Assembly (NCBI RefSeq): GCF_039654945.1
Contig: NW_027361684.1
Span: 56,854,001-56,918,000 of the forward strand
DNA: 64,000 nucleotides
Source of the DNA: Dendrobates tinctorius
Lineage: Eukaryota
Direction: 5' to 3'
Positions within the stretch are counted from its first letter, which is position 1, and every line of letters starts with the position of its first letter. Below, one piece after another: positions 2,263-62,187 of the stretch. The notes under the pieces are model-generated. The model made no database searches, was not told where the DNA came from, and was given only the letters and a program-made list of their open reading frames with translations. The translations under genes and the position numbers were made by a program.

Positions 2263-2418
2263 TTAAAGGAAATACATAAGAGAGACAGAAGATTCGGCAC
2301 TGCTCCTTAACCCCCCAAAGCAGTTCCATGACTGCTATTCAAGTCGAAAATCACACATCTGGACCGACCGCCAAAATACAGTCAGAACGGGTGCTCAATC
2401 CAGAAAAGCAAACATGTA

Positions 2419-2662
2419 ATCTGATTTTGTACAAAAGAGAAAAAAAAGTGATGGCACTCACCGTTCTGTCGTGAAAATTCTTTATTAATTAAAAGGCATT
2501 GGCACGGGAGGAACGTACAGAGAGTGGACAACGGCCGTTTCACTCACTTGCACTTCAACGGGTCCTGATTCCCTCCCGTGCCAATGCCTTTTAATTAATA
2601 AAGAATTTTCACGACAGAACGGTGAGTGCCATCACTTTTTTTTCTCTTTTGTACAAAATCAG
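2419..2662. repeat. Inverted-repeat remnant, Penelope-like pLTR architecture
   Basis: About 90-bp AT-rich arms (2419-2510 vs 2570-2662) containing AATAAA. The spacer reads CCCGTTGAAG...GAAACGGCCG on the minus strand, a degenerate hammerhead-like core. Confidence 0.45.
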
Positions 2663-2883
2663 AATATTTAAAAGGTATTGTTGTAGAGTTACTACTCCTG
2701 TCCATATATTTTATCATAAATTACTGATGCCTAGTGTTGAGCATTCCGATACCGCAAGTATCGGGTATCGGCCGATATTAGCGGTATCAGAATTCCGATA
2801 CCGACTTCCGATACTTTTGTCATATCGGATTCCGGAATCGGAATCGGAAGTTCCCATCATGCTATGAGCCTGCTTGCTTTGAT

Positions 2884-3020
2884 TAAGCCAATGGGAATCC
2901 TCCGAAGTGTGGGCACATCCTGTTAGGCATGTAGGCATGTTAACTATTGGCATGGCTGTGATTGGCTGCCGAAATGATGTCATGATGCACTATAAAAGCC
3001 ACCGCAGCCGCCATTTCTGG
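2884..3020 (+). promoter_or_regulatory. Putative internal Pol II promoter of the hAT element
   Basis: CCAAT near 2889, two reverse CCAAT (ATTGG) near 2946 and 2961, TATAAAAG at 2991-2998, then a YY1-like GCCGCCATTT just downstream. Orientation matches the transposase. Confidence 0.5.
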
Positions 3021-3159
3021 TCACTCTGCTGTGAATTCAGTTAGGGACAGGCTGCTGTAGAAGACTGTGAGGGACAGTTAGAAATAGCGATTCCACCAAA
3101 CATCTAGTGCTTTACCCAGGCTACATAAACCACCACTGTAGCCTTCTTTGCCCTAGCAG

Positions 3160-3910
3160 CAGTGTTCACAGCTGTCTGCAAGGGCTGTGTGAGTGCAGCT
3201 CACGCTGTGGAGTGGGTCCTGCAGCCACGTCAGGCTGTAGGCCACCCAGTGTGATCACTGCTGCCTCATACATCTTTTATTTTTTGAGCTGCATTTTTTA
3301 CATAATTTCAATCTAGTGTGCTTCCATCCGTATCCATATACGTTGGTTGCAAACACTAGTAGTAGACAGCGGAGCCTTTCTGCAGCCTTTCAGTGCTAGT
3401 GTCCACTTTGCTGCACTGTTCACGGCTGTCTGAGAGGTCTCTGACTGTGTGTGAGTGCAGCTCACGCTGAGTAGTGTGTCCTGCAGCTACGTCTGGCTGT
3501 AGGACGCTCAGCGTGCGTCAGTGCCTCACACATATTTTTATTTGAGTGCAGCTCATTTTTTCTTCTATTAGTGTGCATCCATCCGTCTCCATCTACAGTG
3601 GTTGCAAACACTATATAGGAGTACACAGCGGAGCCTTTCTGCAGCCTGTCAGTGCCAGTGCCCACTTAGCTGCACTGTTGACGGCTGTCTGAGAGGTCTC
3701 TGACTGTGTGTGAGTGCAGCTCACGCTGAGTAGAGTGTCCTGCAGCTACGTCTGGTTGTAGGACGCTCAACGTGCGTCACTGCCTCACACATATTTGTCT
3801 TTGAGTGCAGCTCATTTTTTCTTCTCCTATTAGTGTGCATCCATCCGTATCCATCAACATTGGTTGGTTGCAAACACTATATAGGAGTAGATAGAGGAGC
3901 CTTTTTTTCT
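3160..3910 (+). repeat. Three diverged tandem copies of an about 255-260-bp unit in the hAT 5' region
   Basis: GTGTGAGTGCAGCTCACGCTG...TGCAAACACTA...GGAGCCTTT recurs, with units starting near 3163, 3416 and 3675. Confidence 0.8.
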
Positions 3911-4261
3911 GGCTTGTGCCCTGCCGGCGCAGCCAGATTAGTATTACCCAATTTTTTTGGAGCCTCATCTTTTGCATTGTAGGTTACCTGCCTGCATTGT
4001 AATAGCTCCAAAAAGTTGGTGATACTATCAGTTTCAATTCTTTGTTCACATACTTTGAGTTTGTTTCCAACAAAGAAACCACAAAAAAAGTTCACCAAAC
4101 ACTACATTTGGAACTTGTGTAGGCCACATCAGCTCCTATTAAAGTGTAGTCCACACACTTCATAAAATTAGTGTTTCTTGTACTTGTAACCAGCTGTTCA
4201 GGAATAAGCACACTAAGGCCCCCCTTTGTACTTTTCTGCCTATCTTAAGCAGTCTTGCAAG

Positions 4262-4576
4262 ATGAAGAAGGCAGGGAGTAAGGCGCGTGGGCGTGGGCGT
4301 GGAGTTTCAGCAGGGAGAGGACATGGGGATTCTGCAGGGAGAGGATGTGGGGATTCTACAGGTAGAGGACGTGGGGATTCTGGGCCTGCTGCGGGCACCA
4401 GTGGATCAGCATCCCCCAGTTTTAGCAGGCAACAGTCCTTTATGCGCAGCTTTGTAGGACCTCAACGTACCCCACTGCTGCGGGAGGAACAAATTGAAGC
4501 CGTTGTCGGATGGATGGCAGCTAACGCATCGACTTCAATTACTTCCGCATCCTCTCAGGGTCAGAGCACCGAATAG
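4262..4576 (+). CDS. RG-rich N-terminal segment of the hAT transposase, cut off by a single in-frame TAG
   Basis: ATG at 4262 is in the same frame as the 4607-7597 ORF, separated only by TAG at 4574-4576. Encodes MKKAGSKARGRGRGVSAGRGHGDSAGRG... from 21-bp repeats. Confidence 0.65.
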   Translation: MKKAGSKARGRGRGVSAGRGHGDSAGRGCGDSTGRGRGDSGPAAGTSGSASPSFSRQQSFMRSFVGPQRTPLLREEQIEAVVGWMAANASTSITSASSQGQSTE

Positions 4577-4606
4577 CAACCATCTGTCTCTTCACCACCT
4601 GCCAAA

Positions 4607-7597
4607 GTGCCCAGGCAGTCAGAGAGACATGGACAGGAGCCATCACAGTCTCTACTTCTGTTCTCGGAATCTGTTGGCTTGGAAAGAGGGGGCCAGCCAA
4701 GCAGCATTCCTGAATGTGAAGAAGAGGGAGTATGCAGTGATGCGCAACTTCTTTGTCCCTCTGAATCTGAAGAGGCGAGTGGGCCAGTGCCTATGGTCAG
4801 CACACCTCAGTACGCATCAGATGATGACGAGACTCAGTTGCCACTTTCTGGTGCGTACGGTGCTGGCGAGACAACCCCGGAGAAGCAGCTGTTTGAAGAG
4901 GGGAGGGAAGATGATGAGGTCCTTGACCCATCATGGCGTGAGGAACAGGAAGGTGGTGGGAGCAGCTCGGAGGAAGAGATTCCCCTACCGGCCAAAACAG
5001 GAGGCAGAGGGAGGGGGAAGACTTGGTTGCCTGTACCCTCCACTTCGGCACCCGTTAGGAGCATTCCTCATTCCAAAGGCAAACCGGGCGCTCCCAAGAG
5101 TTGCAGTGCGTGGTCCTTTTTTGACACAGTTGCAGATGACATTTGCTTTGTCAAATGCAAGCTGTGTCATCAGAGAGTCAAAAGAGGGAGAAATGTCAGC
5201 AACCTCAATACCACAAATATGTGGAAACATGTGCGCACCAAGCACGAGTTGGAGTTGCAGAGACACCCTGAAGACGTAGGCCAACGTACAGCACCACCTA
5301 CCACCTCTTCAGTTCGTGTTGGGGCCTCTTCCTCCAGCTCACACACTGCTGGTTCGGCTTCCTCACAGGATCGCCAAGGAAGAACCTCTGCCACTGTTGT
5401 CCGGAGACCCTGTCAGATTACACCCATAGCAGCACGTTCCCATCCATCACAGCCATCGGTAGCACAGGCATGGGATAAAAGGCGCCCTTACTCGGCAAAC
5501 CATCCCCGAGCACAGTCTCTGAATGCTGGCATTGCCAAACTTCTGGCAGTTGAAATGCTGTCATTCAGGCTGGTGGACACTGACACCTTCCGGGACTTAA
5601 TGGCATTGGCAGTCCCCCAATACAACGTGCCCAGCCGCTTTTATTTCAGCAGGCGAGCCGTCCCTGCCCTGCAGAAACATGTTGAGGGCAAAATAAAACA
5701 TGCGCTACTAAACGCCGTTAGTAGCAAGGTCCACCTGACCACCGATGCGTGGACCAGTAACCATGGACAGGGACGATACCTTTCCCTCACTGCCCACTGG
5801 GTCAATGTTGTGGAGCCGGGTACGGATCTGGAGAGTGGCGCTGTACGTGTTCTTCCAACGCCACGGATTGCAGGACTCCAGTCTGTACACATAGACTCCT
5901 CCTCCTACTCAAGTTCCTCAGAAACAGCAGAGCAGGAGCCTGTTACGACCGATATGAGCACAGCCGTGGCCAAACGTCAACAGGCTGTACTCAAATTAAT
6001 TTCTTTGGGGAATCGAAGCCACACAGCGCAGGAGCTCTGGAATGCTATCAAGCTGGAGAGCGATGTGTGGTTTGGGCCAGCGAATCTCCAGCCGGGCTTG
6101 GTAGTGTGTGACAATGGCCGAAATCTGGTGGCAGCTCTTGGCCTAGGCAACCTCACACACATCCCATGTCTGGCACATGTTCTTAACTTGGTCGTGCAGA
6201 GCTTTCTGAGGGACTATCCGGATCTTGATGCACTGTTGCACAAGGTCCGCATAGAGTGCGCTCACTTGCGACGTTCCAGCACGGCAAGATCGCGCCTCGC
6301 TGCTCTGCAGCGACGATTTGGCCTTCCGGAACATCGCATCATATGTGACCTACCCACCCGGTGGAATTCAACGTTACATATGTTGGAGCGGTTGTGTGAG
6401 CAGCAGGCAGCAGTTATGGAGTACCAGCTGCATCAGGCGCAAACAAGTCGCACTGTGCGCCGTTCACACTTCAGCACCATTGAGTGGGCCTCTATGAAGG
6501 ACATCTGCCTCGTTTTGCGTGCCTTCGATGAATCCACGCGGATGGCGAGTGCAGATGATGCACTAGTCAGCATGACTGTCCCCCTTATCTGCCTGCTTCA
6601 ACAAACACTGCAAGCACTATGGGATGAGGTTTCGGAAGAGGTGGAGGATGAGGAGTCCCAAATGCCATCTGCTTCTGGACAGTCTGCGCTACGTGTTTCC
6701 TCACAAAGGCCTAGGCAGGGGACACTTTGTGAGGAGGATGAGGAGGAGTCGATGGAGGAGGAAGACATCTCTCCAGAGGAGGGAGGTACACAAACCTCTA
6801 CTCAGTATGTACAGCGAGGGTGGGGTGATGCAGAGCAGGCCGAGGTCACGCCTCAAACAGGGGACAGCGGTTCTTTGGCAGTTGGGAGTCTGCAGCACAT
6901 GGTTGATTTCATGCTGCAGTGCCTGAGAAACGACCGCCGCATCGCCCACATTCTCGTCTCGGCTGATTATTGGGTGTACACCCTCCTAGATCCTCGCTAC
7001 CGGGACAGCGTACAAAGGCTCATACCAACGTTGAACCGGGAGCGTAAAATGCGGGAGTACGAAGAGTCACTGGTGCAGTCCATAATGTTTTCCATTCCAC
7101 CCGACAGCATTGTTGCTATTGCTTTAAAAAGCAGCTCTGTGCGTCGAGGCAGTGGAGGAAACTCTGCACAAAGAGGGAGCAGAGGCAGCGCCGCAGCACA
7201 AGGCAAGACCACTATGGCCCAAATGTGGCAAAGTTTTGTGTGTCCACCACAATTGTCTACAACATCAGCGACGCCTCGAGTCAGCAGGAGGCAACGCTTC
7301 CGTCAGATGGTGTCAGACTACATGTCTTGCCCTGTCGCTGTACTCCCAGATGGCTCTTCCCCCTTCAAGTTTTGGGTCTCTAAGCTGGATACATGGCCAG
7401 AGCTTAGCCAGTATGCATTGGAGGTGCTGGCTTGCCCTGCTGCCAGTGTATTATCGGAACGTGTCTTTAGTGCCGCAGGTGGTGTACTAACAGACCGTCG
7501 CACGCGACTATCTTCCGATAATGTTGACCGGCTGACTTTTCTGAAAATGAACAAGGCCTGGATCTCAAAAGACTTTGCCATTCCTCTTACAGACTAA
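4607..7597 (+). CDS. hAT transposase (ZBED-like: BED zinc finger, RNase H-like DDE core, C-terminal dimerisation domain)
   Basis: BED finger WSFF...CKLC...MWKHVRTKH. Catalytic motifs TTDAW, CDNGRN, CLAH (CxxH), TRWNS and SERVFS. The ORF-track start is GTG; the first in-frame ATG after the TAG is at 4793. Confidence 0.93.
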   Translation: MPRQSERHGQEPSQSLLLFSESVGLERGGQPSSIPECEEEGVCSDAQLLCPSESEEASGPVPMVSTPQYASDDDETQLPLSGAYGAGETTPEKQLFEEGREDDEVLDPSWREEQEGGGSSSEEEIPLPAKTGGRGRGKTWLPVPSTSAPVRSIPHSKGKPGAPKSCSAWSFFDTVADDICFVKCKLCHQRVKRGRNVSNLNTTNMWKHVRTKHELELQRHPEDVGQRTAPPTTSSVRVGASSSSSHTAGSASSQDRQGRTSATVVRRPCQITPIAARSHPSQPSVAQAWDKRRPYSANHPRAQSLNAGIAKLLAVEMLSFRLVDTDTFRDLMALAVPQYNVPSRFYFSRRAVPALQKHVEGKIKHALLNAVSSKVHLTTDAWTSNHGQGRYLSLTAHWVNVVEPGTDLESGAVRVLPTPRIAGLQSVHIDSSSYSSSSETAEQEPVTTDMSTAVAKRQQAVLKLISLGNRSHTAQELWNAIKLESDVWFGPANLQPGLVVCDNGRNLVAALGLGNLTHIPCLAHVLNLVVQSFLRDYPDLDALLHKVRIECAHLRRSSTARSRLAALQRRFGLPEHRIICDLPTRWNSTLHMLERLCEQQAAVMEYQLHQAQTSRTVRRSHFSTIEWASMKDICLVLRAFDESTRMASADDALVSMTVPLICLLQQTLQALWDEVSEEVEDEESQMPSASGQSALRVSSQRPRQGTLCEEDEEESMEEEDISPEEGGTQTSTQYVQRGWGDAEQAEVTPQTGDSGSLAVGSLQHMVDFMLQCLRNDRRIAHILVSADYWVYTLLDPRYRDSVQRLIPTLNRERKMREYEESLVQSIMFSIPPDSIVAIALKSSSVRRGSGGNSAQRGSRGSAAAQGKTTMAQMWQSFVCPPQLSTTSATPRVSRRQRFRQMVSDYMSCPVAVLPDGSSPFKFWVSKLDTWPELSQYALEVLACPAASVLSERVFSAAGGVLTDRRTRLSSDNVDRLTFLKMNKAWISKDFAIPLTD

Positions 7598-7662
7598 ATT
7601 AGTGGTTGGCAACTGTATCCAGGTCTGCTGGTGTGTTCATTTTTCTACCACCTGAACTATAA

Positions 7663-7953
7663 TTCTCATTTGCACAAGGAAAGACTAGAAGCAATGGGAT
7701 GAAACTGAATGGGAAGAGACACAGATTAGATATTAGAAAAAACTTTTTGACAGTTAGAGTGATCAATGAGTGGAACAGGCTGCCACGAGAAGTGGTGAGT
7801 TCTCCTTCAATGGAAGTCTTCAAACAGAGGCTGGACAGACATCTGACTGGGATGATTTAGCGAATCCTGCTTTGAGCAGGGGGTTGGACCAGATGGCCCA
7901 GGAGGTCCCTTCCAACTCTACGATTCTATGATTCTATGATTCTATGATTCTAT
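7663..7953 (+). mobile_element. 5'-truncated CR1 LINE 3' end inserted just after the transposase stop
   Basis: ORF2 C-terminal remnant (RLDIRKNFLTVRVINEWNRLP), GGTCCCTTCCAAC and an (ATTCTATG)n tail typical of CR1. Confidence 0.9.
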
Positions 7954-8104
7954 AATCCCTGTGCTTCAACACAGCCAGTTGTCGCTCAGATGTGTCGTCT
8001 GCACAGAGAAACACACTAGCTCCTGTGTTAGTGGGGTTCAGTAATGCCAGCTGATCCCCTGCTGTATGGACGGCAAAGTCACCAGCTCCATCAACATTCA
8101 AACC

Positions 8105-8509
8105 ACTACTGATTTTTAACCGTGTCCAACTTAGGTCTCTGGCTCCACTGTCTCTACTATTTCCCCTGACCTCCAACCCCGCCATCTACATCTCTGAAGT
8201 GGCGTCAGCACAATCTACACTTGTTCCTGTGGCTCAGTCCCATCAGTTTATCCCCTGATGTGTGTCCGGCAAGGTCTCCTGCTCTGTCCACATTCCCATA
8301 ACCAGTAGTGGGAATGAGGACAGAGCTGGCGAACTTGCCGGACAAACATCAGGGGATCAACTGACGGGACTGAGCACCAGTAACACAGGAACAAGTGTAG
8401 ATTGTGCTGACGCCACTTCAGAGATGTAGCTGGCGGGGTTGGAGGCCAGGGTAAATAGTAGAGACAGTGGAGCCAGAGGCCTAAGTGGAGCATGGTTAGA
8501 ATCAGTAGT
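8105..8509. repeat. Left long inverted repeat (about 200-bp arms, imperfect)
   Basis: ACTACTGATT... pairs with ...AATCAGTAGT, centre near 8300. Arms are diverged homologues of the 180-bp unit. Confidence 0.9.
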
Positions 8510-8562
8510 AGTCCTCAACCTCCATAAAAACCGCTGCCCATTGGCCTCTGCATGCGGCATGC

Positions 8563-10485
8563 GTAATCCTGGGCTCCAACAGTGTCAGTTGGTGTTCAGA
8601 AGTGTCGTCTCCACAGAGCCAAACACATTCGTTCGAGTGTTAGTGGGTTTCAGCACTGCCAGCTGTTCCCCTGCTGTGGAGATGGCAAGTCTCCTGCTGC
8701 CTTCACCTGCCAAAAACAACAGGCCCCAGCCTGCTCCTCGCCTAATCCTGGGCTCCAACAGCGTCAGTTGGTGTTCAGAAGTGTCGTCTCCACAGAGCCA
8801 GACACATTCGTTCAAGTGTTAGTGGGGTTCAGCACTGCCAGCTGTTCCCCTGCTGTGGAGATGGCAAGTCTCCTGCTGCCTTCACCTGCCAAAATCCAGT
8901 AGGCCCCAGCCTGCTCCTCGCCTAATCCTGGGCTCCAACAGCGTCAGTTGGTGTTCAGAAGTGTCGTCTCCACAGAGCCAAACACATTCGTTCAAGTGTT
9001 AGTGGGGTTCAGCACTGCCAGCTGTTCCCCTGCTGTGGAGATGGCAAGTCTCCTGCTGCCTTCACCTGCCAAAATCCAGTAGGCCCCAGCCTGCTCCTCG
9101 CCTAATCCTGGGCTCCAACAGCGTCAGTTGGTGTTCAGAAGTGTTGTCTCCACAGAGCCAGACACATTCGTTCGAGTGTTAGTGGGTTTCAGCACTGCCA
9201 GCTGTTCCCCTGATGTGGAGATGGCAAGTCTCCTGCTGCCTTCACCTGCCAAAATCCAGTAAGCCCCAGCCTGCTCCTCGCCAAATCCTGGGCTCCAACA
9301 GCGTCAGTTGGTGTTCAGAAGTGTCGTCTCCACAGAGCCAAACACATTCGTTCGAGTGTTAGTGGGTTTCAGCACTGCCAGCTGTTCCCCTGCTGTGGAG
9401 ATGGCAAGTCTCCTGCTGCCTTCACCTGCCAAAATCCAGTAGGCCCCAGCCTGCTCCACGCCAAATCCTGGGCTCCAACAGCGTCAGTTGGTGTTCAGAA
9501 GTGTCGTCTCCACAGAGCCAAACACATTCGTTCAAGTGTTAGTGGGTTTCAGCACTGCCAGCTGTTCCCCTGCTGTGGAGATGGCAAGTCTCCTGCTGCC
9601 TTCACCTGCCAAAATCCAGTAGGCCCCAGCCTGCTCCACGCCTAATCCTGGGCTCCAACAGCGTCAGCTGGTGTTCAGAAGTGTCGTCTCCACAGAGCCA
9701 AACACATTCGTTCAAGTGTTAGTGGGTTTCAGCACTGCCAGCTGTTCCCCTGCTGTGGAGATGGCAAGTCTCCTGCTGCCTTCACCTGCCAAAATCCAGT
9801 AGGCCCCAGCCTGCTCCACGCCTAATCCTGGGCTCCAACAGCGTCAGTTGGTGTTCAGAAGTGTCGTCTCCACAGAGCCAAACACATTCGTTCAAGTGTT
9901 AGTGGGGTTCAGCACTGCCAGCTGTTCCCCTGCTGTGGAGATGGCAAGTCTCCTGCTGCCTTCACCTGCCAAAATCCAGTAGGCCCCAGCCTGCTCCTCG
10001 CCAAATCCTGGGCTCCAACAGCGACAGTTGGTGTTCAGAAGTGTCGTCTCCACAGAGCCAAACACATTCGTTCGAGTGTTAGTGGGTTTCAGCACTGCCA
10101 GCTGTTCCCCTGCTGTGGAGATGGCAAGTCTCCTGCTGCCTTCACCTGCCAAAATCCAGTAGGCCCCAGCCTGCTCCTCGCCAAATCCTGGGCTCCAACA
10201 GCGACAGTTGGTGTTCAGAAGTGTCGTCTCCACAGAGCCAAACACATTCGTTCGAGTGTTAGTGGGTTTCAGCACTGCCAGCTGTTCCCCTGCTGTGGAG
10301 ATGGCAAGTCTCCTGCTGCCTTCACCTGCCAAAATCCAGTAGGCCCCAGCCTGCTCCTCGCCTAATCCTGGGCTCCAACAGCGTCAGTTGGTGTTCAGAA
10401 GTGTCGTCTCCACAGAGCCAAACACATTCGTTCAAGTGTTAGTGGGGTTCAGCAATGCCAGCTGTTCCCCTGCTGTGGAGATGGC
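8563..10485 (+). repeat. 180-bp tandem array A (about 10.7 units)
   Basis: AGGCCCCAGCCTGCTCC recurs every 180 bp from 8721 to 10341, with only a few substitutions per unit. Confidence 0.98.
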
Positions 10486-13400
10486 AGTCTCTCCTGCTGT
10501 CTCCGCATTCCAAAGACAGTAGGCCTCTGCCTACACCCTCCTATTTCCTGGGCTTCAACTCAGCCAGTTGTAGCTCGGAAGTGCCGTCCACATGGAAAGA
10601 GATACTTGCTCCCGTGTCTCAGTGGGGTTCAGTAACGTCAGCTGATCCCCTGCTGTGTGGATGGCAGTCTCTCCTGCTGTCACCTCATTCAAAATACAGT
10701 AGGCCTCTGCCTACACCCTCCTATTTCCTGGGCTTCAACACAGCCAGTTGTAGTTCGGAAGTGCCGTCCACACGGAAAGAGATACTTGCTCCCGTGTCTC
10801 AGTGGGGTTCAGTAACGTCAGCTGATCCCCTGCTGTGTGGATGGCAGTCTCTCCTGCTGTCACCTCATTCAAAATACAGTAGGCCTCTGCCTACACCCTC
10901 CAATTTCCTGGGCTTCAACACAGCCAGTTGTAGTTCGGAAGTGCCGTCCACACGGAAAGAGACACTTGCTCCCGTGTCTCAGTGGGGTTCAGTAACGTCA
11001 GCTGATCCCCTGCTGTGTGGATGGCAGTCTCTCCTGCTGTCACCACATTCCAAATACAGTAGGCCTCTGCCTACACCCTCCTATTTCCTGGGCTTCAACA
11101 CAGCCAGTTGTAGTTCGGAAGTGCCGTCCACACGGAAAGAGACACTTGCTCCCGTGTCTCAGTGGGGTTCAGTAACGTCAGCTGATCCCCTGCTGTGTGG
11201 ATGGCAGTCTCTCCTGCTGTCACCACATTCCAAAGACAGTAGGCCTCTGCCTACACCCTCCTATTTCCTGGGCTTCAACTCAGCCAGTTGTAGCTCGGAA
11301 GTGCCGTCCACACGGAAAGAGATACTTGCTCCCGTGTCTCAGTGGGGTTCAGTAACGTCAGCTGATCCCCTGCTGTGTGGATGGCAGTCTCTCCTGCTGT
11401 CACCTCATTCAAAATACAGTAGGCCTCTGCCTACACCCTCCTATTTCCTGGGCTTCAACACAGCCAGTTGTAGTTCGGAAGTGCCGTCCACACGGAAAGA
11501 GATACTTGCTCCCGTGTCTCAGTGGGGTTCAGTAACGTCAGCTGATCCCCTGCTGTGTGGATGGCAGTCTCTCCTGCTGTCACCTCATTCAAAATACAGT
11601 AGGCCTCTGCCTACACCCTCCAATTTCCTGGGCTTCAACACAGCCAGTTGTAGTTCGGAAGTGCCGTCCACACGGAAAGAGACACTTGCTCCCGTGTCTC
11701 AGTGGGGTTCAGTAACGTCAGCTGATCCCCTGCTGTGTGGATGGCAGTCTCTCCTGCTGTCACCACATTCCAAATACAGTAGGCCTCTGCCTACACCCTC
11801 CTATTTCCTGGGCTTCAACACAGCCAGTTGTAGCTCGGAAGTGCCGTCCACACGGAAAGAGACACTTGCTCCCGTGTCTCAGTGGGGTTCAGTAACGTCA
11901 GCTGATCCCCTGCTGTGTGGATGGCAGTCTCTCCTGCTGTCACCTCATTCAAAATACAGTAGGCCTCTGCCTACACCCTCCAATTTCCTGGGCTTCAACA
12001 CAGCCAGTTGTAGTTCGGAAGTGCCGTCCACACGGAAAGAGACACTTGCTCCCGTGTCTCAGTGGGGTTCAGTAACGTCAGCTGATCCCCTGCTGTGTGG
12101 ATGGCAGTCTCTCCTGCTGTCACCTCATTCAAAATACAGTAGGCCTCTGCCTACACCCTCCAATTTCCTGGGCTTCAACTCAGCCAGTTGTAGCTCGGAA
12201 GTGCCGTCCACATGGAAAGAGATACTTGCTCCCGTGTCTCAGTGGGGCTCAGTAACGTCAGCTGATCCCCTGCTGTGTGGATGGCAGTCTCTCCTGCTGT
12301 CACCTCATTCAAAATACAGTAGGCCTCTGCCTACACCCTCCTATTTCCTGGGCTTCAACACAGCCAGTTGTAGTTCGGAAGTGCCGTCCACACGGAAAGA
12401 GATACTTGCTCCCGTGTCTCAGTGGGGTTCAGTAACGTCAGCTGATCCCCTGCTGTGTGGATGGCAGTCTCTCCTGCTGTCACCTCATTCAAAATACAGT
12501 AGGCCTCTGCCTACACCCTCCAATTTCCTGGGCTTCAACACAGCCAGTTGTAGTTCGGAAGTGCCGTCCACACGGAAAGAGACACTTGCTCCCGTGTCCC
12601 AGTGGGGTTCAGTAACGTCAGCTGATCCCCTGCTGTGTGGATGGCAGTCTCTCCTGCTGTCACCTCATTCAAAATACAGTAGGCCTCTGCCTACCCCCTC
12701 CAATTTCCTGGGCTTCAACACAGCCAGTTGTAGTTCGGAAGTGCCGTCCACACGGAAAGAGACACTTGCTCCCGTGTCTCAGTGGGGTTCAGTAACGTCA
12801 GCTGATCCCCTGCTGTGTGGATGGCAGTCTCTCCTGCTGTCACCACATTCCAAATACAGTAGGCCTCTGCCTACACCCTCCTATTTCCTGGACTTCAACA
12901 CAGCCAGTTGTAGCTCGGAAGTGCCGTCCACACGGAAAGAGACACTTGCTCCCGTGTCTCAGTGGGGTTCAGTAACGTCAGCTGATCCCCTGCTGTGTGG
13001 ATGGCAGTCTCTCCTGCTGTCACCTCATTCAAAATACAGTAGGCCTCTGCCTACACCCTCCAATTTCCTGGGCTTCAACTCAGCCAGTTGTAGCTCGGAA
13101 GTGCCGTCCACATGGAAAGAGATACTTGCTCCCGTGTCTCAGTGGGGTTCAGTAACGTCAGCTGATCCCCTGCTGTGTGGATGGCAGTCTCTCCTGCTGT
13201 CACCTCATTCAAAATACAGTAGGCCTCTGCCTACACCCTCCTATTTCCTGGGCTTCAACACAGCCAGTTGTAGTTCGGAAGTGCCGTCCACACGGAAAGA
13301 GATACTTGCTCCCGTGTCTCAGTGGGGTTCAGTAACGTCAGCTGATCCCCTGCTGTGTGGATGGCAGTCTCTCCTGCTGTCACCTCATTCAAAATACAGT

Positions 13401-14820
13401 AGGCCTCTGCCTACACCCTCCTATTTCCTGGGCTTCAACACAGCCAGTTGTAGTTCGGAAGTGCCGTCCACACGGAAAGAGATACTTGCTCCCGTGTCTC
13501 AGTGGGGTTCAGTAACGTCAGCTGATCCCCTGCTGTGTGGATGGCAGTCTCTCCTGCTGTCACCTCATTCAAAATACAGTAGGCCTCTGCCTACACCCTC
13601 CAATTTCCTGGGCTTCAACACAGCCAGTTGTAGTTCGGAAGTGCCGTCCACACGGAAAGAGACACTTGCTCCCGTGTCTCAGTGGGGTTCAGTAACGTCA
13701 GCTGATCCCCTGCTGTGTGGATGGCAGTCTCTCCTGCTGTCACCTCATTCAAAATACAGTAGGCCTCTGCCTACTCCCTCCTATTTCCTGGGCTTCAACA
13801 CAGCCAGTTGTAGTTCGGAAGTGCCGTCCACACGGAAAGAGACACTTGCTCCCGTGTCTCAGTGGGGTTCAGTAACGTCAGCTGATCCCCTGCTGTGTGG
13901 ATGGCAGTCTCTCCTGCTGTCACCACATTCCAAATACAGTAGGCCTCTGCCTACACCCTCCTATTTCCTGGACTTCAACACAGCCAGTTGTAGCTCGGAA
14001 GTGCCGTCCACACGGAAAGAGACACTTGCTCCCGTGTCTCAGTGGGGTTCAGTAACGTCAGCTGATCCCCTGCTGTGTGGATGGCAGTCTCTCCTGCTGT
14101 CACCTCATTCAAAATACAGTAGGCCTCTGCCTACACCCTCCAATTTCCTGGGCTTCAACTCAGCCAGTTGTAGCTCGGAAGTGCCGTCCACATGGAAAGA
14201 GATACTTGCTCCCGTGTCTCAGTGGGGTTCAGTAACGTCAGCTGATCCCCTGCTGTGTGGATGGCAGTCTCTCCTGCTGTCACCTCATTCAAAATACAGT
14301 AGGCCTCTGCCTACACCCTCCTATTTCCTGGGCTTCAACACAGCCAGTTGTAGTTCGGAAGTGCCGTCCACACGGAAAGAGATACTTGCTCCCGTGTCTC
14401 AGTGGGGTTCAGTAACGTCAGCTGATCCCCTGCTGTGTGGATGGCAGTCTCTCCTGCTGTCACCTCATTCAAAATACAGTAGGCCTCTGCCTACACCCTC
14501 CAATTTCCTGGGCTTCAACACAGCCAGTTGTAGTTCGGAAGTGCCGTCCACACGGAAAGAGACACTTGCTCCCGTGTCTCAGTGGGGTTCAGTAACGTCA
14601 GCTGATCCCCTGCTGTGTGGATGGCAGTCTCTCCTGCTGTCACCTCATTCAAAATACAGTAGGCCTCTGCCTACTCCCTCCTATTTCCTGGGCTTCAACA
14701 CAGCCAGTTGTAGTTCGGAAGTGCCGTCCACACGGAAAGAGACACTTGCTCCCGTGTCTCAGTGGGGTTCAGTAACGTCAGCTGATCCCCTGCTGTGTAG
14801 ATGGCAAAGTCTCCTGCTGC
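10486..14820 (+). repeat. 180-bp tandem array B (about 24 units), in phase with array A
   Basis: AGGCCTCTGCCTAC recurs every 180 bp from 10521 to 14661. About 65% ungapped identity to the A unit by manual comparison. Confidence 0.98.
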
Positions 14821-14835
14821 CTACACAGTCGTACC

Positions 14836-15241
14836 ACTACTGATTTTTAACCGTGCTCCAATTAGGCCTGTGGCTCCACTGTCTCTCGTATTTCCCCTGT
14901 CCTCCAACCCTGCCAGTTACAGCTCCGAAGTGGCGTCTGCACAATCCACACTTGTTCCTGTGTTACAGGTGTTCAGTCCGGTCAGTTAATCCCCTGATGT
15001 GTGTCCGGCAATGTCGCCTGCTCTGTCCACATTCCCATTATGGGAATGTGGACAGAGCAGGCGACATTGCCGGACACACATCAGGGGATTAACTGACCGG
15101 ACTGAACACCTGTAACACAGGAACAAGTGTGGATTGTGCAGACGCCACTTCGGAGCTGTAACTGGCAGGGTTGGAGGACAGGGGAAATACGAAAATCAGT
15201 GAAGCCACAGGCCTAAGTGGAGCTTGGTTAAAATTAGTAGT
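14836..15241. repeat. Right long inverted repeat with about 153-bp perfect arms
   Basis: 14886-15038 is the exact reverse complement of 15040-15192 with a 1-nt spacer. Imperfect pairing extends to 14836/15241. Confidence 0.95.
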
Positions 15242-15800
15242 CTACAACCGATATTAAATTTTCTTCAATGCAGCCTCAGCCTGCTCCGTGCTTGTCCCTG
15301 GGCTTCAACACAGCCAGTTGTTGCTCGGAAGTGCCGTCTTCACAGAGTAAAACACTAGCTCCTGTGTTTGTGGGGTTCAGTAACGTCAGCTGTTCCCCTG
15401 CTGTTTTGATGGCAATCTGTCCTGCTGCCTCCCAATTGACAGCACATCAGGCCTCAGCCTGCTAAGTGCTTGTCCTGGGCTCCAACATCGCCAGTTGCTG
15501 CTCATAACTGACTTTGGCACGGGTACTCCCTCCTGCCCAGCTTGGTTCCAGCCCTGCCTGCTGTTTCCGGGAAGTGTCAATGTCAGTTTGCCACCCCAAG
15601 TTGCCATGTCGTGTTGCGGTTGGGTTAGCCGAGGCTAGGGTGCCAGCAGTTTAGGTGCTTCCTATGTGGACTGCGGGTTCTGGTAAGAAAGGCTTGTTCC
15701 ATAGTGCCAGTAGGACAAGCACCCCCTGTAGGACTGTGTGATTCGGTAACTGCGGCCAGCTTGCGGCATGCCAACTTTGCTTTTCAGGGGTAACTTCTGA

Positions 15801-16829
15801 TACCCCTCCGGGTTCCAGCACCGTCAGCTGGTTCTCGTCAGAGCCTTTGGCCTAGGTGCCTCCATCTCGGTATCCGAGTTCCGGCAACGTCTGCTGGTCC
15901 TTGGTAGTGCTTTGTAGCACAGGTACCTCCTGCTTAGTAACCGGGTTCCAGCACCGTCAGCTGGTCCTCGGTTGTGCCATTGGCTCTTATTCCTTCTGCT
16001 GCCCCTCCGGGTGCCAGCACTGTCAGCTGGTCCTCGCTATTTCCATTTGCTCTTGCAGCTTATGCTACCCCTCCGGGTTCCAGCACCGTCAGCTGGTTCT
16101 CGTCAGAGCCTTTGGCCTAGGTGCCTCCATCTCGGTATCCGAGTTCCGGCAACGTCTGCTGGTCCTTGGTAGTGCTTTGTAGCACAGGTACCTCCTGCTT
16201 AGTAACCGGGTTCCAGCACCGTCTGCTGGTCCTCGGTTGTGCCATTGGCTCTTATTCCTTCTGCTGCCCCTCCGGGTGCCAGCACTGTCAGCTGGTCCTC
16301 GCTATTTACATTTGCTCTTGCAGCTTATGCTACCCCTCCGGGTTCCAGCACCGTCAGCTGGTTCTCGTCAGAGCCTTTGGCCTAGGTGCCTCCATCTCGG
16401 TATCCGAGTTCCGGCAACGTCTGCTGGTCCTTGGTAGTGCTTTGTAGCACAGGTACCTCCTGCTTAGTAACCGGGTTCCAGCACCGTCTGCTGGTCCTCG
16501 GTTGTGCCATTGGCTCTTATTCCTTCTGCTGCCCCTCCGGGTGCCAGCACTGTCAGCTGGTCCTCGCTATTTACATTTGCTCTTGCAGCTTATGCTACCC
16601 CTCCGGGTTCCAGCACCGTCAGCTGGTTCTCGTCAGAGCCTTTGGCCTAGGTGCCTCCATCTCGGTATCCGAGTTCCGGCAACGTCTGCTGGTCCTTGGT
16701 AGTGCTTTGTAGCACAGGTACCTCCTGCTTAGTAACCGGGTTCCAGCACCGTCAGCTGGTCCTCGGTAGTGCCATTGGCTCTTGTTCCTTCTGCTGCCCC
16801 TCCAGGTGCCAGTACCGTCAGCTGGTTCA
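15801..16829 (+). repeat. 265-bp tandem array C (about 3.9 units), each unit with four copies of the shared 27-nt stem-loop
   Basis: TACCCCTCCGGGTTCCAGCACCGTCAGCTGG at 15801, 16066, 16331 and 16596. Confidence 0.95.
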
Positions 16830-17159
16830 AGAGGACAAAGAACAGGAAGACAACCACCAAGATGCAGAACAACAAGAGAGAGAAGACAAAGAAGCATAAA
16901 AAAAACAAAGCAGAAGAACATTAAGCATAAGACTAATACTCTGAGCAAATGATATTATCTTATTTATAAGCAGAAGACGACTAAGCAGTGTATGGGGGTG
17001 AGTCCGTTCCTCCTCGTGGTGCCCCTGGAAAAGGCCTGCTGCTGCAGGCCAAACTGAACGCGGACAAATCTTGTTGTAAATCTTTTGTGACAGGCAGAAC
17101 GGAAGGTGTAAACTTCTAACTTTTCTAGATAACAACTACAGGAATGCCTGACACAAACA

Positions 17160-17492
17160 AGAATATGATGAAGAAGAATAGGAAGAAGATGAAGAAGTTG
17201 AATATGTAGAATAATAATTGTTGAATAAGAAGAATATGAAGAATGTAAGAAAAGGAAGAAGAAGAAGAATGTAAAAAAAGGAAGTAGAAGAATTTAAAAA
17301 AGGAAGAAGAAGAAGAATGTAAAAAAAGGAATAAGAAGAAGAATGTAAAAAAAGGAAGAAGAAGAAGAATGTAAAAAAAGGAAGAAGAAGAAGAATGTAA
17401 AAAAAGGAAGTAGAAGAATGTAAAAAAAGGAAGAAGAAGAAGAAGAAGAAGGTAAAAAAGGGAAGAAGAATAAGAAAGAAGAAAGAAGAAGA
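17160..17492 (+). repeat. Purine-rich (GAA)n / AAGAATGTAAAAAAAGG minisatellite inside the hAT 3' end
   Basis: Repeated GAAGAAGAAGAATGTAAAAAAAG units. Confidence 0.9.
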
Positions 17493-18169
17493 CATACATG
17501 TCTGCCAAAATATAAATAAGGCTAACATAGTCAATATCTTTGTAACTCCTAACGTCTTTAAAAAAAAAGTTTAATTCCTGCTATTCCTTTTGATTGGGCT
17601 AAAACTCTATGGCTTTAATGTCTCCTCCACCTCCCACAATACATTCTACATTATTCTTAGTTGTTTTTCTTCATGTAGAATTAACCTACAAGGAAAGAAA
17701 GGGTTTTTTTTAATTCCGATATTTTGGCCCCATTGACTTGCATTGGTTACCGGTATCGGAATCGGCGATACCGATATTTTTTTTTAAGATCGGCCGATCC
17801 ATTCCGATCCGATATTTTCAAGTATCGGCTGGTATCGCTCAACTCTACTGATGCCATAAAGTACGAGTTTCAGAGCAGCCTCTCTAGGAGCCAGAACATA
17901 AGTCTACTTTTTAAGTCCATGCATAACATGGTCAGGTATTCACTTATATGGCTGAAATATAATGTTAGATTTCTCCAGAAAAAGCCTCTGTCAAAAAGGA
18001 AGCTGCAAACTTTTTAGAAAGTGGTTGTCTTCATGAGAAGATCCTTTTAGCATAGATGGTGTTAGCTACTGCTAACAACACAGAACATATAATATTTCAA
18101 GTAAATCTTTAGAAATGATATGGCATATGGATGCAGTTTGCGAGACATACCCTTTACATGCCTAAAGCT

Positions 18170-18320
18170 ATAATAATAATAATTTTATTTCTATAGCGCC
18201 GACATATTCCGCAGCACTTTACATTTCAGAGGGGACTTGTACAGATGATAGACATTACAGCATAACAATAATCACATAGATTATAACAGATACCAAGAGG
18301 AATGAGGGCCCTGCTCACAT
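18170..18320 (-). mobile_element. 3' tail fragment of an L2-type LINE or related SINE
   Basis: Minus strand reads ...TGTAAAGTGCTGCGGAATATGTCGGCGCTATAGAAATAAAA followed by an (ATT)n tail. Confidence 0.5.
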
Positions 18321-20326
18321 AATACTCTTCTTATAACATTTTTGAGATCTCTTGTCATATAAATTGCTTATTATTTTTCTACTTATAGCCCAGACCAGAC
18401 GTATAGCTGCTAAAGTCTATTGCCAGTTCACTGTACTTGCAAAAGTACATTTCTATCTTGCATCCACAGCCAACTGAGTGCCACAAGTATTACAGAGAAG
18501 TCCAGCTTACCTTCTGAGATCTTTCCATTTTCACATCAAATCGCCTGTGAATTTTGAGTGAAAGTTCTTACTCATGGTGTCGAATTGTAGACCGAGCATT
18601 ATATTTATACCCCCACCCCATTAAAGTTCCACCTACAATATTATATCTGACAAACCAGCAAAACGCTTGCTCGTCAGCTGAAACGATCTGTCGGTTTGAT
18701 CAAAAGATCACTGTTCTCGACAGAGAATTGCCCTGTGTAAACGAGAGATGAGCTGCCGAGAACAGTATGCGCACTGAACGAGGTCTTACTGATTGTTCAG
18801 TGACCATCCAAAGCGCGTTAGCATGTGTAAAAAGGCTATTAAATGACCACCGACCGGCAAACATGTTTCCAGAAGGTGGTCATTTAACGTTGCACATGGC
18901 TCAGTGTAAATGCACCCTTAAAGTATGAGCACACGCTAAGTATTTACTGCAAGAATTTCTGCATGGTTTCTGCATCTCTTGGCGGTAAAAATGTAGCATA
19001 AAATATGGGCATTTTTATTGCACTTTTTACTTGCCTTTTTGCTGCACATTTCTCCCCACTCATCAGTATGGGTGAAATCTGCTGCAATTAACATGCTACA
19101 GATTTATTGTGTGAACTTAGCCTATCTATGATTATTTACCTTATAGCTAGCTATATCAATGAACCACTGGGGATATCCTCGTTGCCCCAATCTAGTATAT
19201 ACTGTAACTTTGATAGGAAGAGGCAATGTTTCCAAAACAGAGTTATACATCGTTAAAAGATCCCAGAAGGTGCGCTGGACTTCATACACGTTCCTACTGA
19301 AAAAAAAATCTGTATTCAGAAGGGCAGGTGTCCGTCAATGCACCCATTCGAGAGAATCGGACTGACTATTTAGATGACGCTCTGCTCAAAGTTTGATCAG
19401 AGGGCCAGCATAGTGTCATCTGATTCTCTCAGATGAGGAAATGAGGGAAAAAAAATGTCTCTATCTTCTCCATTCTGTCAATGAGCAGAAATCGGACTCC
19501 ACTCAGATCTCTTCCGAGTGCAATTCGATGTTTCCCACGCACTCACTGACCTGCATGGCCAGGCGTAATGCAAACATCTGATCTAACTTGGTCATGCGGC
19601 GATTCCTATTCTTGAAAAGTGTCTGTCTGAAGGCCCCATACACTAACATTGCTCCAATGTTTTGTTGGATACGCTCATCTGCACCTGCCATAAAGGTGGA
19701 CCAGGAATTGTGGGAGATTCTACATAAATGCACTATATTCCAATGATTTTTCTTCTTACAAAGCATTGACAAATGTTACCAAGTCCCATATTTTTAGATA
19801 CTCAGGCTGAGCATGTTAAAAAAAAATTGGAAGTCTCTTGCAAAATTCTGAGCTTTCTGGACTCAAACATTTCCAGTGATAAGACTGACTGAAAACCATG
19901 CCGATTAAATCTGTTCTGGAAAATAAATTCCTTCAAGTCACAAAGATTAATTTGATCGGGCAGGAACTGATATATTACCATGGTCAACCTTTTAACGATC
20001 GCTAACGACACAGACAACCAACTCGCTGGGGGACACTCGGGAGTCTTCACCATGGAGTTAAGTTATGGACTTTCCACTGCACTGAAACATACGTGTACAG
20101 CTTCTGCTCCACATGATTGGCTACGTTACGTATGTATTGCAACATTTATAACGTTGACATTTTACCATCTATTGAATATTTCATCTTTTTTACTGGAAAC
20201 TTTCCTATGTAGCAGGAATTGAAATGTGACCATGTCTATTACAACTATGTGCATGCAGATTCCTTATGGAGTGTATTTTTATAGAAGCAGTAACATCATT
20301 TGATTACACAACTGTACACAGCTCTT

Positions 20327-21547: not shown

Positions 21548-21831
21548 TAGTGATGAGCAAGTGTGCCCATTACTCGAGATTTCCGAGCATGCTTGGGTGA
21601 TCTCTGAGTATTTTGGGTGTGCTCGGAGATTTAGTTTGTGTTGCCGCAGCTGCATGATTTGTGGCTGCTAGACAGCCTGAATACATCTGGATATTCCCTA
21701 ACAAACAGGCAACCCCCACATGTATTCAGGCTGTCTAGCAGCCACAAATCATGCAGCTGCGGCAACACAAACTAAATCTCTGAGCACTTCCAAATACTCT
21801 GAGAACACCCGAGCATACTCGCTCAATACTA
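21548..21831. mobile_element. Non-autonomous hAT MITE with termini related to the giant hAT
   Basis: TAGTGATGAGC...GCTCAATACTA termini, degenerate 8-bp TSD GTTCCGAT/CTTCCGAC, internal palindrome. Confidence 0.8.
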
Positions 21832-24357: not shown

Positions 24358-24839
24358 TAGATCTGGTCTTTGACTAGGCCATTCAATAACCCTTGAAATC
24401 TTTTTAATCTTAGATTTAGTCTCTATTCACACTGTAATCAGAGAAGCCATTGGCAATGGTTGCAACAGTATTACTGACATCAAAACATCTGCCCCACTTG
24501 TAAGTCAATGAGGTCCTTCAGATACCAATGGGATCCATCATATAAATGAATTAATTTTGTAGGAGTGGAAGCTCTATAGTTCTGTGAAGGCTTACCGGTA
24601 TGTTTATGGCGACTGTCACAGGCCAGTTTCAGGAAGGTTTCAGACAGATGCATTTTAGTATTTAGTGTAACCTTTATAGGGGTGCTCCCTTCTCTAATAC
24701 GTACTGTGTACAGGGCAGGGGCCAGAGATGGATAGAATTACGGAATCAGAAGAGCAGGCAGTGTTACATCTAATATAGTGAAGGGTATAGTTTTGCACAG
24801 CCAACTAGTTTCCAGAGTCCCGGCCACCTCTGCCTGCTA

Positions 24840-25611: not shown

Positions 25612-25613
25612 TT

Positions 25614-25630
25614 TGGCGTAGTCGGCAGGA
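25614..25630 (+). promoter_or_regulatory. Primer-binding site complementary to the tRNA-Ser 3' end
   Basis: TGGCGTAGTCGGCAGGA is the reverse complement of ...UCCUGCCGACUACGCCA and lies 2 nt after the LTR. Confidence 0.85.
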
Positions 25631-25649
25631 CGCAGCATACCAGTCCACC

Positions 25650-52662: not shown

Positions 52663-52695
52663 TTACTCTTTGGGATATTTACACAGAACAACACT

Positions 52696-62100: not shown

Positions 62101-62186
<86 letters not shown>

Positions 62187-62187
<1 letters not shown>

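What the first reader, a model, noticed from the sequence alone, without database searches (positions are those of the whole stretch)
2732..17847. 15-kb hAT transposon that moved as one unit with about 10 kb of organised repeat and hairpin cargo
Seen in sequence: one perfect 8-bp TSD and matching TIRs enclose the promoter, transposase, a stray unit, hairpin 1, array A, array B, hairpin 2, further units, array C and a GAA tract. Established: autonomous hAT elements (Ac, hobo, Tol2) are typically a few kb. Inference: the perfect TSD, near-intact transposase and homogeneous arrays suggest a recent insertion whose cargo belongs to the family rather than being random decay. That would make it a DNA transposon carrying a dedicated structured-repeat module.
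Basis: partly seen in the sequence, partly recalled or inferred. Interest (0 to 1): 0.85.

Follow-up and report, generated by a model that had tools for sequence, protein, structure and literature searches.

The report
Giant frog hAT transposon with repeat cargo
This is a real, recently inserted 15-kb "jumping gene" of the hAT type in a poison-frog genome; two thirds of it is tandem repeats and large palindromes, all built from one 180-bp unit, which makes it an unusually large example of the known habit of transposons to breed and carry satellite-like DNA.

Summary
A perfect 8-bp duplication (CTGATGCC) and 11-bp inverted ends (10/11 matching) enclose 15,116 bp. Inside are matching CCGATA-type subterminal motifs, a 1,111-codon BED/DDE/hAT-dimerisation transposase with one TAG stop, and about 9.5 kb of cargo.

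A CR1 LINE fragment sits just after the transposase. The whole cargo derives from one ~180-bp unit: lone unit, two ~410-nt palindromes, arrays A and B, extra units, and more distantly array C.

"Moved as one unit" is supported indirectly. The cargo parts differ by 4-36%, but the reading frame is too intact for more than about 1-2% decay. So the cargo types predate this insertion.

"Cargo belongs to the family" could not be tested. No DNA of dendrobatid relatives could be fetched. A 42%-identical relative in Leptodactylus fuscus is also large (10.9 kb, perfect TSD and TIRs) with a 6.2-kb tail, unrelated in sequence.

No function of the cargo is shown. It has no coding homologs and no Rfam family. 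A 27-nt hairpin core is conserved, with some compensatory changes.

Published parallels exist: FEDoR in Rana, Tetris, Helentron repeats, 14-kb ToxhAT. This scan's unchecked notes list similar giant hATs elsewhere in this genome.

Verdict: new variant of a known kind, moderate interest.

The parts
2724..2731 (.). left copy of the 8-bp target-site duplication CTGATGCC
2732..2742 (+). 5' terminal inverted repeat TAGTGTTGAGC
2743..2850 (.). 5' subterminal region with ATTCCGATACC-type motifs in both orientations (likely transposase-binding sites; inferred)
2880..3000 (+). promoter-like stretch (CCAAT boxes, TATAAAAG); read from the sequence only, not tested
3186..3904 (+). 259-bp tandem repeat, 2.7 copies, 86% alike, upstream of the ORF
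4262..7597 (+). hAT transposase gene, 1,111 codons, no intron. It has a BED finger, a DDE/W core alignable to Hermes and a hAT dimerisation domain. There is one in-frame TAG at 4574-4576. A 24-bp x3.5 repeat at 4298-4382 encodes RGRG-rich N-terminal repeats.
7662..7953 (+). nested CR1-like LINE 3' end with (ATTCTATG)n tail
7954..8102 (+). isolated 180-bp-family unit (nhmmer E 1e-34)
8102..8512 (.). palindrome 1, 411 nt. Its arms are diverged array units, K2P 0.094 between arms. DNA fold -207 kcal/mol.
8543..10542 (+). array A: nine in-register 180-bp units from 8743 at 97.9% mutual identity, preceded by a partial unit and a first A-type unit at 8563 (97% to the A consensus, offset by one base). 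It ends with a hybrid A/B unit at 10363-10542.
10543..14830 (+). array B: 23 full units at 98.0% plus a truncated last unit, in phase with A. It has 12 variable columns in a roughly 5-unit higher-order pattern. One open frame runs through it and has no homologs.
14833..15241 (.). palindrome 2, 409 nt, 3-nt loop. The central ~150 nt per arm are perfectly complementary; K2P 0.041 between arms. DNA fold -254 kcal/mol.
15273..15589 (+). about 1.7 further diverged units. The block unit-palindrome-unit at 14687-15430 matches 7958-8702 at 80.5%.
15794..16826 (+). array C: 265 bp x3.9 at 98%, built of four 66-bp sub-units. It is distantly related to the 180-bp unit (nhmmer E 3e-5 to 7e-4) and shares the 27-nt core.
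17156..17492 (+). GAA/AAG-rich low-complexity tract
17700..17847 (-). 3' subterminal motifs (CCGATA, ATCGG) and 3' TIR (reverse complement TAGAGTTGAGC, 17837-17847)
17848..17855 (.). right copy of the TSD CTGATGCC

Best explanation
A single, young, almost autonomous hAT DNA transposon of a frog-specific lineage (TIR TAGWGWTGAGC, ZBED4/6-like transposase) inserted here by cut-and-paste and made the 8-bp duplication.

The stretch between its stop codon and its 3' subterminal region is a permissive tail in which extra DNA builds up. A ~180-bp unit, itself made of shorter sub-repeats that share a 27-nt hairpin-forming core, was amplified and diversified inside the element lineage. The likely routes are slippage, unequal exchange and fold-back (inversion-duplication) events. 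The products are two array types, a 4 x 66-bp array and two palindromes made of inverted units. A CR1 fragment was also picked up.

These cargo types already existed in the parent copy and were carried along, because only the two ends are needed for transposition. Copy numbers may have changed since.

The cargo is most likely non-coding passenger DNA that persists because it does not hinder transposition in a very large, repeat-tolerant genome. It is not a module needed by the element.

Shown: element boundaries, transposase identity, common descent of all cargo parts, and their divergence relative to the intactness of the ORF. Inferred: how the repeats amplified, that the cargo was co-mobilised, and that it has no function.
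For: - Boundaries: TSD, TIR and shared subterminal motifs.
- Transposase: BED and hAT dimerisation domains. Hermes alignment with the D, D, W and E motif contexts conserved: TTDAWT, VCDNGRN, PTRWNST, SERVFS. 79% identity over the full length to a Ranitomeya variabilis protein, and 42-56% to proteins of many frogs.
- Reading frame: colinear and intron-less, with one TAG.
- No internal TIR and no inverted repeat bounding the cargo.
- A profile of the A and B units finds the lone unit, all four palindrome arms, the extra units and array C, and nothing outside the element.
- Divergences: A versus B 64-70%; palindrome 1 versus 2 K 0.12-0.16; arms K 0.094 and 0.041.
- Simulated neutral decay adds about 1.2 stops per 1% divergence. 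The chance of no further stop is 0.10 at 2% and 0.01 at 4%.
- Array B has only 12 variable columns, patterned in ~5-unit blocks, with 3-5 private changes. This points to recent block duplication.
- The cargo has no protein homologs and no Rfam family.
- A Leptodactylus fuscus relative (L010:12297-23241) has a perfect 8-bp TSD, 14/14 TIR and an open 918-aa ORF. It also carries a 6.2-kb tail with hairpins and a 41-bp x15 array, unrelated in sequence to this one.
- Published precedent for transposon-borne arrays.
Against: - No second copy of this family could be examined, so co-mobilisation of the cargo rests on the ORF-decay argument. That argument assumes palindromes and arrays mutate at about the same rate as the ORF, and that no gene conversion from other copies has refreshed the ORF.
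- The 27-nt core is kept as a hairpin across all unit types: 88% of cells paired, 14 double-sided changes, reached by 1 of 500 shuffles. This hints at some constraint, which a pure-passenger view does not predict.
- There is no AATAAA between the stop codon and the 3' end. The cargo might therefore be transcribed with the transposase message.
- The hairpins in the L. fuscus tail look like nested MITEs rather than unit-built palindromes, so the parallel is one of size and position only.
Confidence: 0.68

Rival explanations
1. The element arrived much smaller, carrying only a few units and perhaps one palindrome. Most of the 9.5 kb grew at this locus afterwards by unequal exchange and replication slippage. 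On this reading it did not move as a 15-kb unit.
For: The arrays are 98% homogeneous, with block-patterned variants and almost no private mutations. That is what very recent local expansion gives. Copy number cannot be dated from one copy.
Against: The different cargo types (A, B, C, two palindromes, lone units) are 4-36% diverged, yet the ORF allows at most about 1-2% decay in place. So at least one unit of each type, and the mirrored unit-palindrome-unit blocks, were present on arrival. Only array length is open.
Confidence: 0.3
2. The repeats are a host satellite that an ancestor copy captured, for example by gap repair or aberrant transposition next to an array. The element is then only an accidental vehicle.
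For: Divergence among A, B and C is deep, as expected of an old satellite family. TE-satellite exchange in both directions is documented.
Against: No unit-like sequence and no 27-nt core on the + strand in the other 49 kb of the window. One lone 17-of-27 match to the core turned up on the minus strand outside the element. All units share one orientation and lie in an ordered, mirrored layout inside the element. The sample is tiny relative to a multi-Gb genome, so this reading is weakly constrained.
Confidence: 0.15
3. The palindrome-bracketed arrays are a selected module of the element. One option is that they are transcribed in the long 3' tail and yield hairpin RNAs or small RNAs that tune silencing of the family. 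Another is that they supply arrays of a dyad-symmetric protein-binding site.
For: A conserved 27-nt hairpin core with compensatory changes across all unit types. Two ~410-nt near-perfect palindromes. No canonical poly(A) signal before the 3' end. Units fold better than shuffles, z -3.3 to -6.4. Unchecked scan notes report similar tails in other hATs of this genome.
Against: No expression or small-RNA data. Rfam gives only sub-threshold generic hairpin hits. The covariation sample consists of related repeats, for which the shuffle control is known to be lenient. The core is unrelated to the subterminal CCGATA motifs. The tail of the L. fuscus relative shares no sequence with this one. Hairpin-prone units may simply amplify more readily.
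Confidence: 0.1
4. Assembly artefact: the palindromes come from chimeric long reads and the array lengths are mis-assembled.
For: Long homogeneous arrays and spacerless palindromes are classic trouble spots for assemblers. The central 150 nt per arm of palindrome 2 is perfectly complementary.
Against: The arms differ (K 0.094 and 0.041), and the two palindromes differ from each other by 12-16%. An artefact would give identical arms. The arrays carry ordered variant patterns. TSD and TIRs are coherent.
Confidence: 0.04

Closest known systems
[quoted passage not shown]
   Same: A dispersed, TSD-flanked frog DNA element whose core is several internal tandem-repeat arrays bracketed by close pairs of inverted repeats: [IR fwd-IR rev-(TR)n-IR fwd-IR rev]. 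A short hAT similarity lies in its flank. Its authors expected an autonomous partner.
   Different: FEDoR is ~3.5 kb, has no ORF and has 22-bp-class repeat units. The present element is 15 kb, encodes a near-intact transposase, has 180- and 265-bp units, and its palindromes are made of the array units. Sequence relatedness could not be tested.
Autonomous hAT elements (Hermes, Ac, hobo, Tol2)
   Same: 8-bp TSD, short TIRs, subterminal repeated motifs, BED plus DDE plus hAT-dimerisation transposase. Alignable to Hermes, with the catalytic motif contexts conserved.
   Different: Three to four times longer than typical. Two thirds of it is non-coding repeats placed after the gene. One nonsense codon.
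10.9-kb hAT of Leptodactylus fuscus (L010:12297-23241, found here)
   Same: Same TIR type (TAGAGATGAGCGAG), perfect 8-bp TSD, homologous transposase (42% identity), and a long (6.2-kb) tail between the stop codon and the right TIR that contains hairpins and a tandem array.
   Different: The tail sequence is unrelated. Its hairpins look like nested MITEs. It has only one short array (41 bp x15).
Tetris foldback transposon (Drosophila virilis), and the Helentron/DINE central tandem repeats of oyster and Drosophila
   Same: DNA transposons that carry internal tandem repeats which can seed or spread satellite-like DNA.
   Different: Different superfamilies, mostly non-autonomous. In Tetris the repeats build the long terminal inverted repeats. 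Here the arrays are internal and in one orientation.
ToxhAT (14-kb hAT-like transposon of wheat-pathogenic fungi; PMC12506042 abstract)
   Same: A hAT-type element of similar size that carries cargo.
   Different: Its cargo is protein-coding genes in a fungus, not tandem repeats.
Tx1 composite elements of Xenopus laevis (from memory; not confirmed in the paper search)
   Same: As I recall, frog DNA-type elements with TIRs and variable numbers of ~400-bp internal tandem repeats.
   Different: Not hAT. The details were not checked here.

Membership tests
hAT superfamily DNA transposon | 8-bp target-site duplication | tested here: met
   CTGATGCC on both sides, 8/8
hAT superfamily DNA transposon | short terminal inverted repeats beginning YARNG | tested here: met
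   TAGTGTTGAGC and TAGAGTTGAGC, 10/11 matching. These are the only perfect pattern matches in the window.
hAT superfamily DNA transposon | transposase with BED zinc finger, RNase-H-like DDE core and C-terminal hAT dimerisation domain | tested here: met
   PF02892 E 6e-8 and PF05699 E 4e-14. Hermes alignment covers the D, D, W and E motif contexts.
hAT superfamily DNA transposon | autonomy: uninterrupted transposase reading frame | tested here: not met
   One in-frame TAG at 4574-4576 in the N-terminal region upstream of the BED finger. The rest is open.
hAT superfamily DNA transposon | multiple dispersed copies with different TSDs | not testable with these tools
   No other copy in the window. 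Genome DNA of dendrobatid relatives is not retrievable. A related element with a different TSD was seen in L. fuscus.
FEDoR-like TR-carrying frog DNA element | order: inverted-repeat pair, tandem arrays, inverted-repeat pair, inside TSDs | tested here: met
   Palindrome 1, arrays A and B, palindrome 2, then array C, compared with the published scheme.
FEDoR-like TR-carrying frog DNA element | non-autonomous, ~3.5 kb, no ORF | tested here: not met
   15.1 kb with a 1,111-codon transposase gene
FEDoR-like TR-carrying frog DNA element | sequence similarity to FEDoR | not testable with these tools
Foldback / Tetris-type element | long terminal inverted repeats built of tandem sub-repeats | tested here: not met
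   The TIRs are 11 bp. The arrays are internal and all in + orientation; only the palindrome arms are inverted.
Gene-capturing (Pack-type) transposon | cargo made of host gene fragments | tested here: not met
   No protein homologs for the only long cargo ORF. Apart from the CR1 fragment, the cargo is unit-derived repeats.
Genomic satellite DNA | the same units in long arrays outside transposon ends | tested here: inconclusive
   None in the other 49 kb of the window. The rest of the genome could not be searched.

The most novel reading that the evidence does not exclude
A lineage of hyloid-frog hAT transposons has evolved a heritable 'tail module': arrays of a hairpin-core unit bracketed by unit-built palindromes. 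The module is maintained by selection on the element, for instance as a source of long hairpin RNA or small RNAs that modulate host silencing. These same elements would be the autonomous partners of FEDoR-type repeat carriers and a substantial driver of satellite spread and genome gigantism in poison frogs.
Probability: 0.1. Interest if true: 0.75.

Novelty: new variant of a known kind. Interest (0 to 1): 0.45.

Why it matters
Transposon-borne tandem repeats are a recognised route by which satellite DNA arises and spreads, but the documented carriers are mostly small non-autonomous elements. Here a near-autonomous hAT carries about 9 kb of one diversifying repeat family, including unit-built palindromes. 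Internal evidence indicates that this cargo travels with the element.

If the many similar notes from this genome hold up, such elements would help explain how dendrobatid genomes reached 6-12 Gb. They would also supply the missing autonomous counterpart for FEDoR-like elements described in Rana. As a single copy it remains a well-documented example rather than a new principle.

Tried and rejected
- Fetching DNA around close relatives failed because the sample files are too large. This covered Ranitomeya variabilis P0001, Dendrobates tinctorius P0005, Anomaloglossus P0008 and R. imitator P0023. One look-up was not sent because no place was free.
- An exact-sequence look-up of the window's own ORF found nothing on record.
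- Engystomops L001 has no recognisable TIR or TSD around its intron-containing homolog, so it is uninformative.
- Dendropsophus L011 has arrays on both sides of the homolog, but no TIR pair lies within +/-10 kb. Only MITEs carry the TIR there.
- The array-B open frame (1,462 aa) was searched as a protein twice. The only results were chance hits to bacterial and tick repeat proteins, so a coding reading is rejected. Pfam hits were sub-threshold.
- The Rfam scan found no ribozyme or known RNA. It gave only generic miRNA-model hits, plus a SNORD17 hit right at its gathering threshold (45.2 bits against 45), all centred on the palindromes.
- Metagenome scan for the 27-nt core: 0 hits. In the scan for the TIR plus subterminal motif I set the spacer wrongly (7 N; the true gaps are 3 and 8). 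Its 8 hits are unrelated microbial contigs. This test is therefore void rather than negative.
- A nested-element origin of the cargo is rejected. No inverted repeats or TSD bound it and there are no extra TIRs.
- No paralogous empty site exists in the window.
- The Tx1 precedent could not be confirmed in the paper library.

Full report
**What is there**

The window is TE-rich DNA of a dendrobatid-type frog. The best protein matches of the element's transposase are Ranitomeya variabilis (79% over the full length), then Phyllobates, Dendrobates, Anomaloglossus and other hyloid frogs.

At 2732 the sequence begins TAGTGTTGAGC. At 17847 it ends with the reverse complement of TAGAGTTGAGC. Both ends are flanked by CTGATGCC. 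These are the only perfect matches to the TIR pattern in the 64 kb. A blind search for an 8-bp TSD plus TIR around the transposase returns this pair.

Both ends carry the same CCGATA, TATCGG and ATTCCG motifs in both orientations. More than half of all window copies sit in those ~340 bp. The observation of one TSD-bounded 15,116-bp hAT element is confirmed.

**The gene**

The reading frame starts at ATG 4262 and ends at 7597, 1,111 codons. It is colinear with frog homologs and has no intron.

It holds a BED finger and the hAT dimerisation domain. It aligns to Hermes transposase through the catalytic core, with the D, D, W and E motif contexts conserved.

There is one in-frame TAG at 4574-4576. 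The R. variabilis protein reads through at that position. There is no frameshift. The copy is therefore strictly non-autonomous, but only just.

**The interior**

- Upstream of the gene there is a 259-bp x2.7 repeat.
- 65 bp after the stop codon comes a ~290-bp CR1-type LINE 3' end with its (ATTCTATG)n tail. A second copy lies at 62.2 kb.
- Then follow a lone unit and a 411-nt palindrome.
- Array A has nine in-register units at 97.9% mutual identity, preceded by a first A-type unit offset by one base.
- A hybrid unit joins A to B.
- Array B has 23 units at 98.0%, in phase with A.
- Next come a 409-nt palindrome and about 1.7 further units.
- Array C is 265 bp, made of 4 x 66 bp, x3.9 copies.
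- A GAA-rich tract leads to the 3' end.

A profile built from the A and B units detects the lone unit, all four palindrome arms (E 1e-15 to 1e-20), the extra units and, weakly, array C (E 3e-5 to 7e-4). It detects nothing outside the element. Apart from the CR1 piece and the GAA tract, the whole cargo is therefore one repeat family that diversified.

A 27-nt core occurs 65 times on the + strand of the cargo and twice per A unit. At the same match threshold it does not occur on the + strand outside the element, and it matches once on the minus strand there.

**Did the cargo move with the element?**

No second copy could be examined, so I used an internal clock.

- The parts of the cargo differ a great deal. 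A versus B is 64% identical in register and 70% with gaps. Palindrome 1 versus 2 gives K2P 0.12-0.16. The arms of palindrome 1 give 0.094 and those of palindrome 2 give 0.041.
- Simulated neutral substitution of this ORF adds about 1.2 stop codons per 1% divergence. The chance of no further stop is 0.10 at 2% and 0.01 at 4%, even before indels are counted.
- The copy can therefore have decayed by at most about 1-2% since its frame was last functional.
- This is far too little for the cargo types to have diverged in place. They were present in the parent copy and came along.

The argument does not fix array length. Array B has only 12 variable columns, arranged in ~5-unit blocks, and 3-5 private changes. 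Block duplications were therefore very recent and could be local.

Two caveats apply. Palindromes and arrays may mutate faster than unique DNA. Conversion from other copies could have refreshed the ORF.

**Is the cargo something else?**

- There are no internal TIRs, and no inverted repeats or TSD bound the cargo, so it is not a nested second element.
- The one long open frame through array B has no homologs among 5.8 billion and 1.8 billion proteins. With a 180-bp unit, an open frame is expected by chance in a fair fraction of cases.
- Rfam gives only sub-threshold generic hairpin hits at the palindrome centres.
- The units fold better than shuffles (z -3.3 to -6.4).
- The 27-nt core keeps a 4+5-bp stem across 20 distinct variants. 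88% of cells are paired, against 26-52% for slid partners. There are 14 double-sided changes, a count reached by 1 of 500 shuffles.
- That is a real regularity. But the variants are related repeats, for which the tool warns the shuffle control is lenient. Hairpin-prone units may also simply amplify better.
- No function is shown.

**Relatives**

DNA around dendrobatid homologs could not be fetched.

In Leptodactylus fuscus a 42%-identical homolog lies in a 10,945-bp element (L010:12297-23241). It has a perfect TSD (CTCCTTAG), a 14/14 TIR (TAGAGATGAGCGAG), an open 918-aa ORF and a 6.2-kb tail. The tail holds hairpins, at least one of which looks like a nested MITE, and a 41-bp x15 array.

That tail is unrelated in sequence to the one here. 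The same TIR type ends short MITEs in L010, in L011 and in this window at 21548-21831.

A long, permissive tail between the stop codon and the 3' end is therefore a recurrent trait of this frog hAT lineage. The particular content is not.

Unchecked notes of this scan list many other 'giant hAT with arrays, hairpins or cargo bay' loci in the same genome. One earlier follow-up judged such an element an instance of the known way transposons carry satellite-like DNA. I could not read those loci and use them only as leads.

**Comparison with the literature**

- FEDoR of Rana temporaria is a 3.5-kb, ORF-less, TSD-flanked dispersed element. It is organised as IR pair, arrays, IR pair, has a short hAT similarity in its flank, and its authors anticipate an autonomous partner.
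- Reviews list MITE-, Helentron-, DINE- and Tetris-borne arrays, mostly in non-autonomous elements.
- hAT elements make up about 3.9% of the Dendrobates tinctorius assembly.
- A 14-kb hAT-type element with gene cargo (ToxhAT) is known in fungi.

The present element is thus a new variant of a known kind. It is a large, near-autonomous hAT whose tail is a self-derived family of arrays and palindromes.

**Verdict**

One unit, recent, and cargo carried along: yes, by inference. A family-wide conserved order and a 'dedicated' module: untested.
- Interest is moderate (0.45).

Noticed in passing
window 21548-21831: A 284-bp palindromic MITE with hAT-type ends (TAGTGATGAGC and, as reverse complement, TAGTATTGAGC) and an imperfect 8-bp TSD (GTTCCGAT / CTTCCGAC). 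It has the same TIR type as the giant element and as MITEs in Leptodactylus and Dendropsophus loci.
   Followed up: partly
window 7662-7953 and 62185-62422 (-): Two copies, 92% alike, of a CR1-like LINE 3' end with an (ATTCTATG)n tail. One is nested in the hAT tail. The other is embedded between (TA)n and (TC)n microsatellites.
   Followed up: partly
window 23119-23991 (-) and 33133-33705 (+): Tc1/mariner (Sleeping Beauty-like) transposase N-terminal ORFs with HTH_SB and HTH_Tnp_Tc3_2 domains. The surroundings are TE-rich.
   Followed up: partly
window 2417-2666: A 250-bp hairpin (95-nt arms, 99% complementary, 60-nt loop) only ~60 bp left of the hAT insertion site. It is probably a young MITE.
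   Followed up: no
window 37417-39053: A stack of inverted-repeat pairs (arms 122-166 nt, 85-92%) that together form a ~1.6-kb near-continuous palindrome or foldback structure.
   Followed up: no
window 52310-55550; 58141-58604; 59450-61033: Further long inverted repeats: 114-135-nt arms about 2.2-3.0 kb apart; a 215-nt-arm hairpin; and 190-nt arms 1.2 kb apart. These are probably other DNA transposons.
   Followed up: no
window 10455-14843 (+): A 1,462-codon open frame runs through array B because the 180-bp unit lacks stops in one frame. It has no homologs and is judged non-coding.
   Followed up: yes
L010:1299-9233 and 23994-26113; L011:12-8188 and 17913-19876: Many 28-41-bp-period arrays of 0.3-2.8 kb surround the hAT homologs in Leptodactylus fuscus and Dendropsophus ebraccatus. 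In L010 they lie outside the TSD-bounded element. In L011 no TIR pair could be found around the homolog, so their relation to it is open.
   Followed up: partly
window 14833-15241: Palindrome 2 is perfectly complementary over the central ~150 nt per arm but mismatched in the outer ~50 nt. This suggests ongoing conversion spreading from the centre, or a recent re-formation.
   Followed up: no
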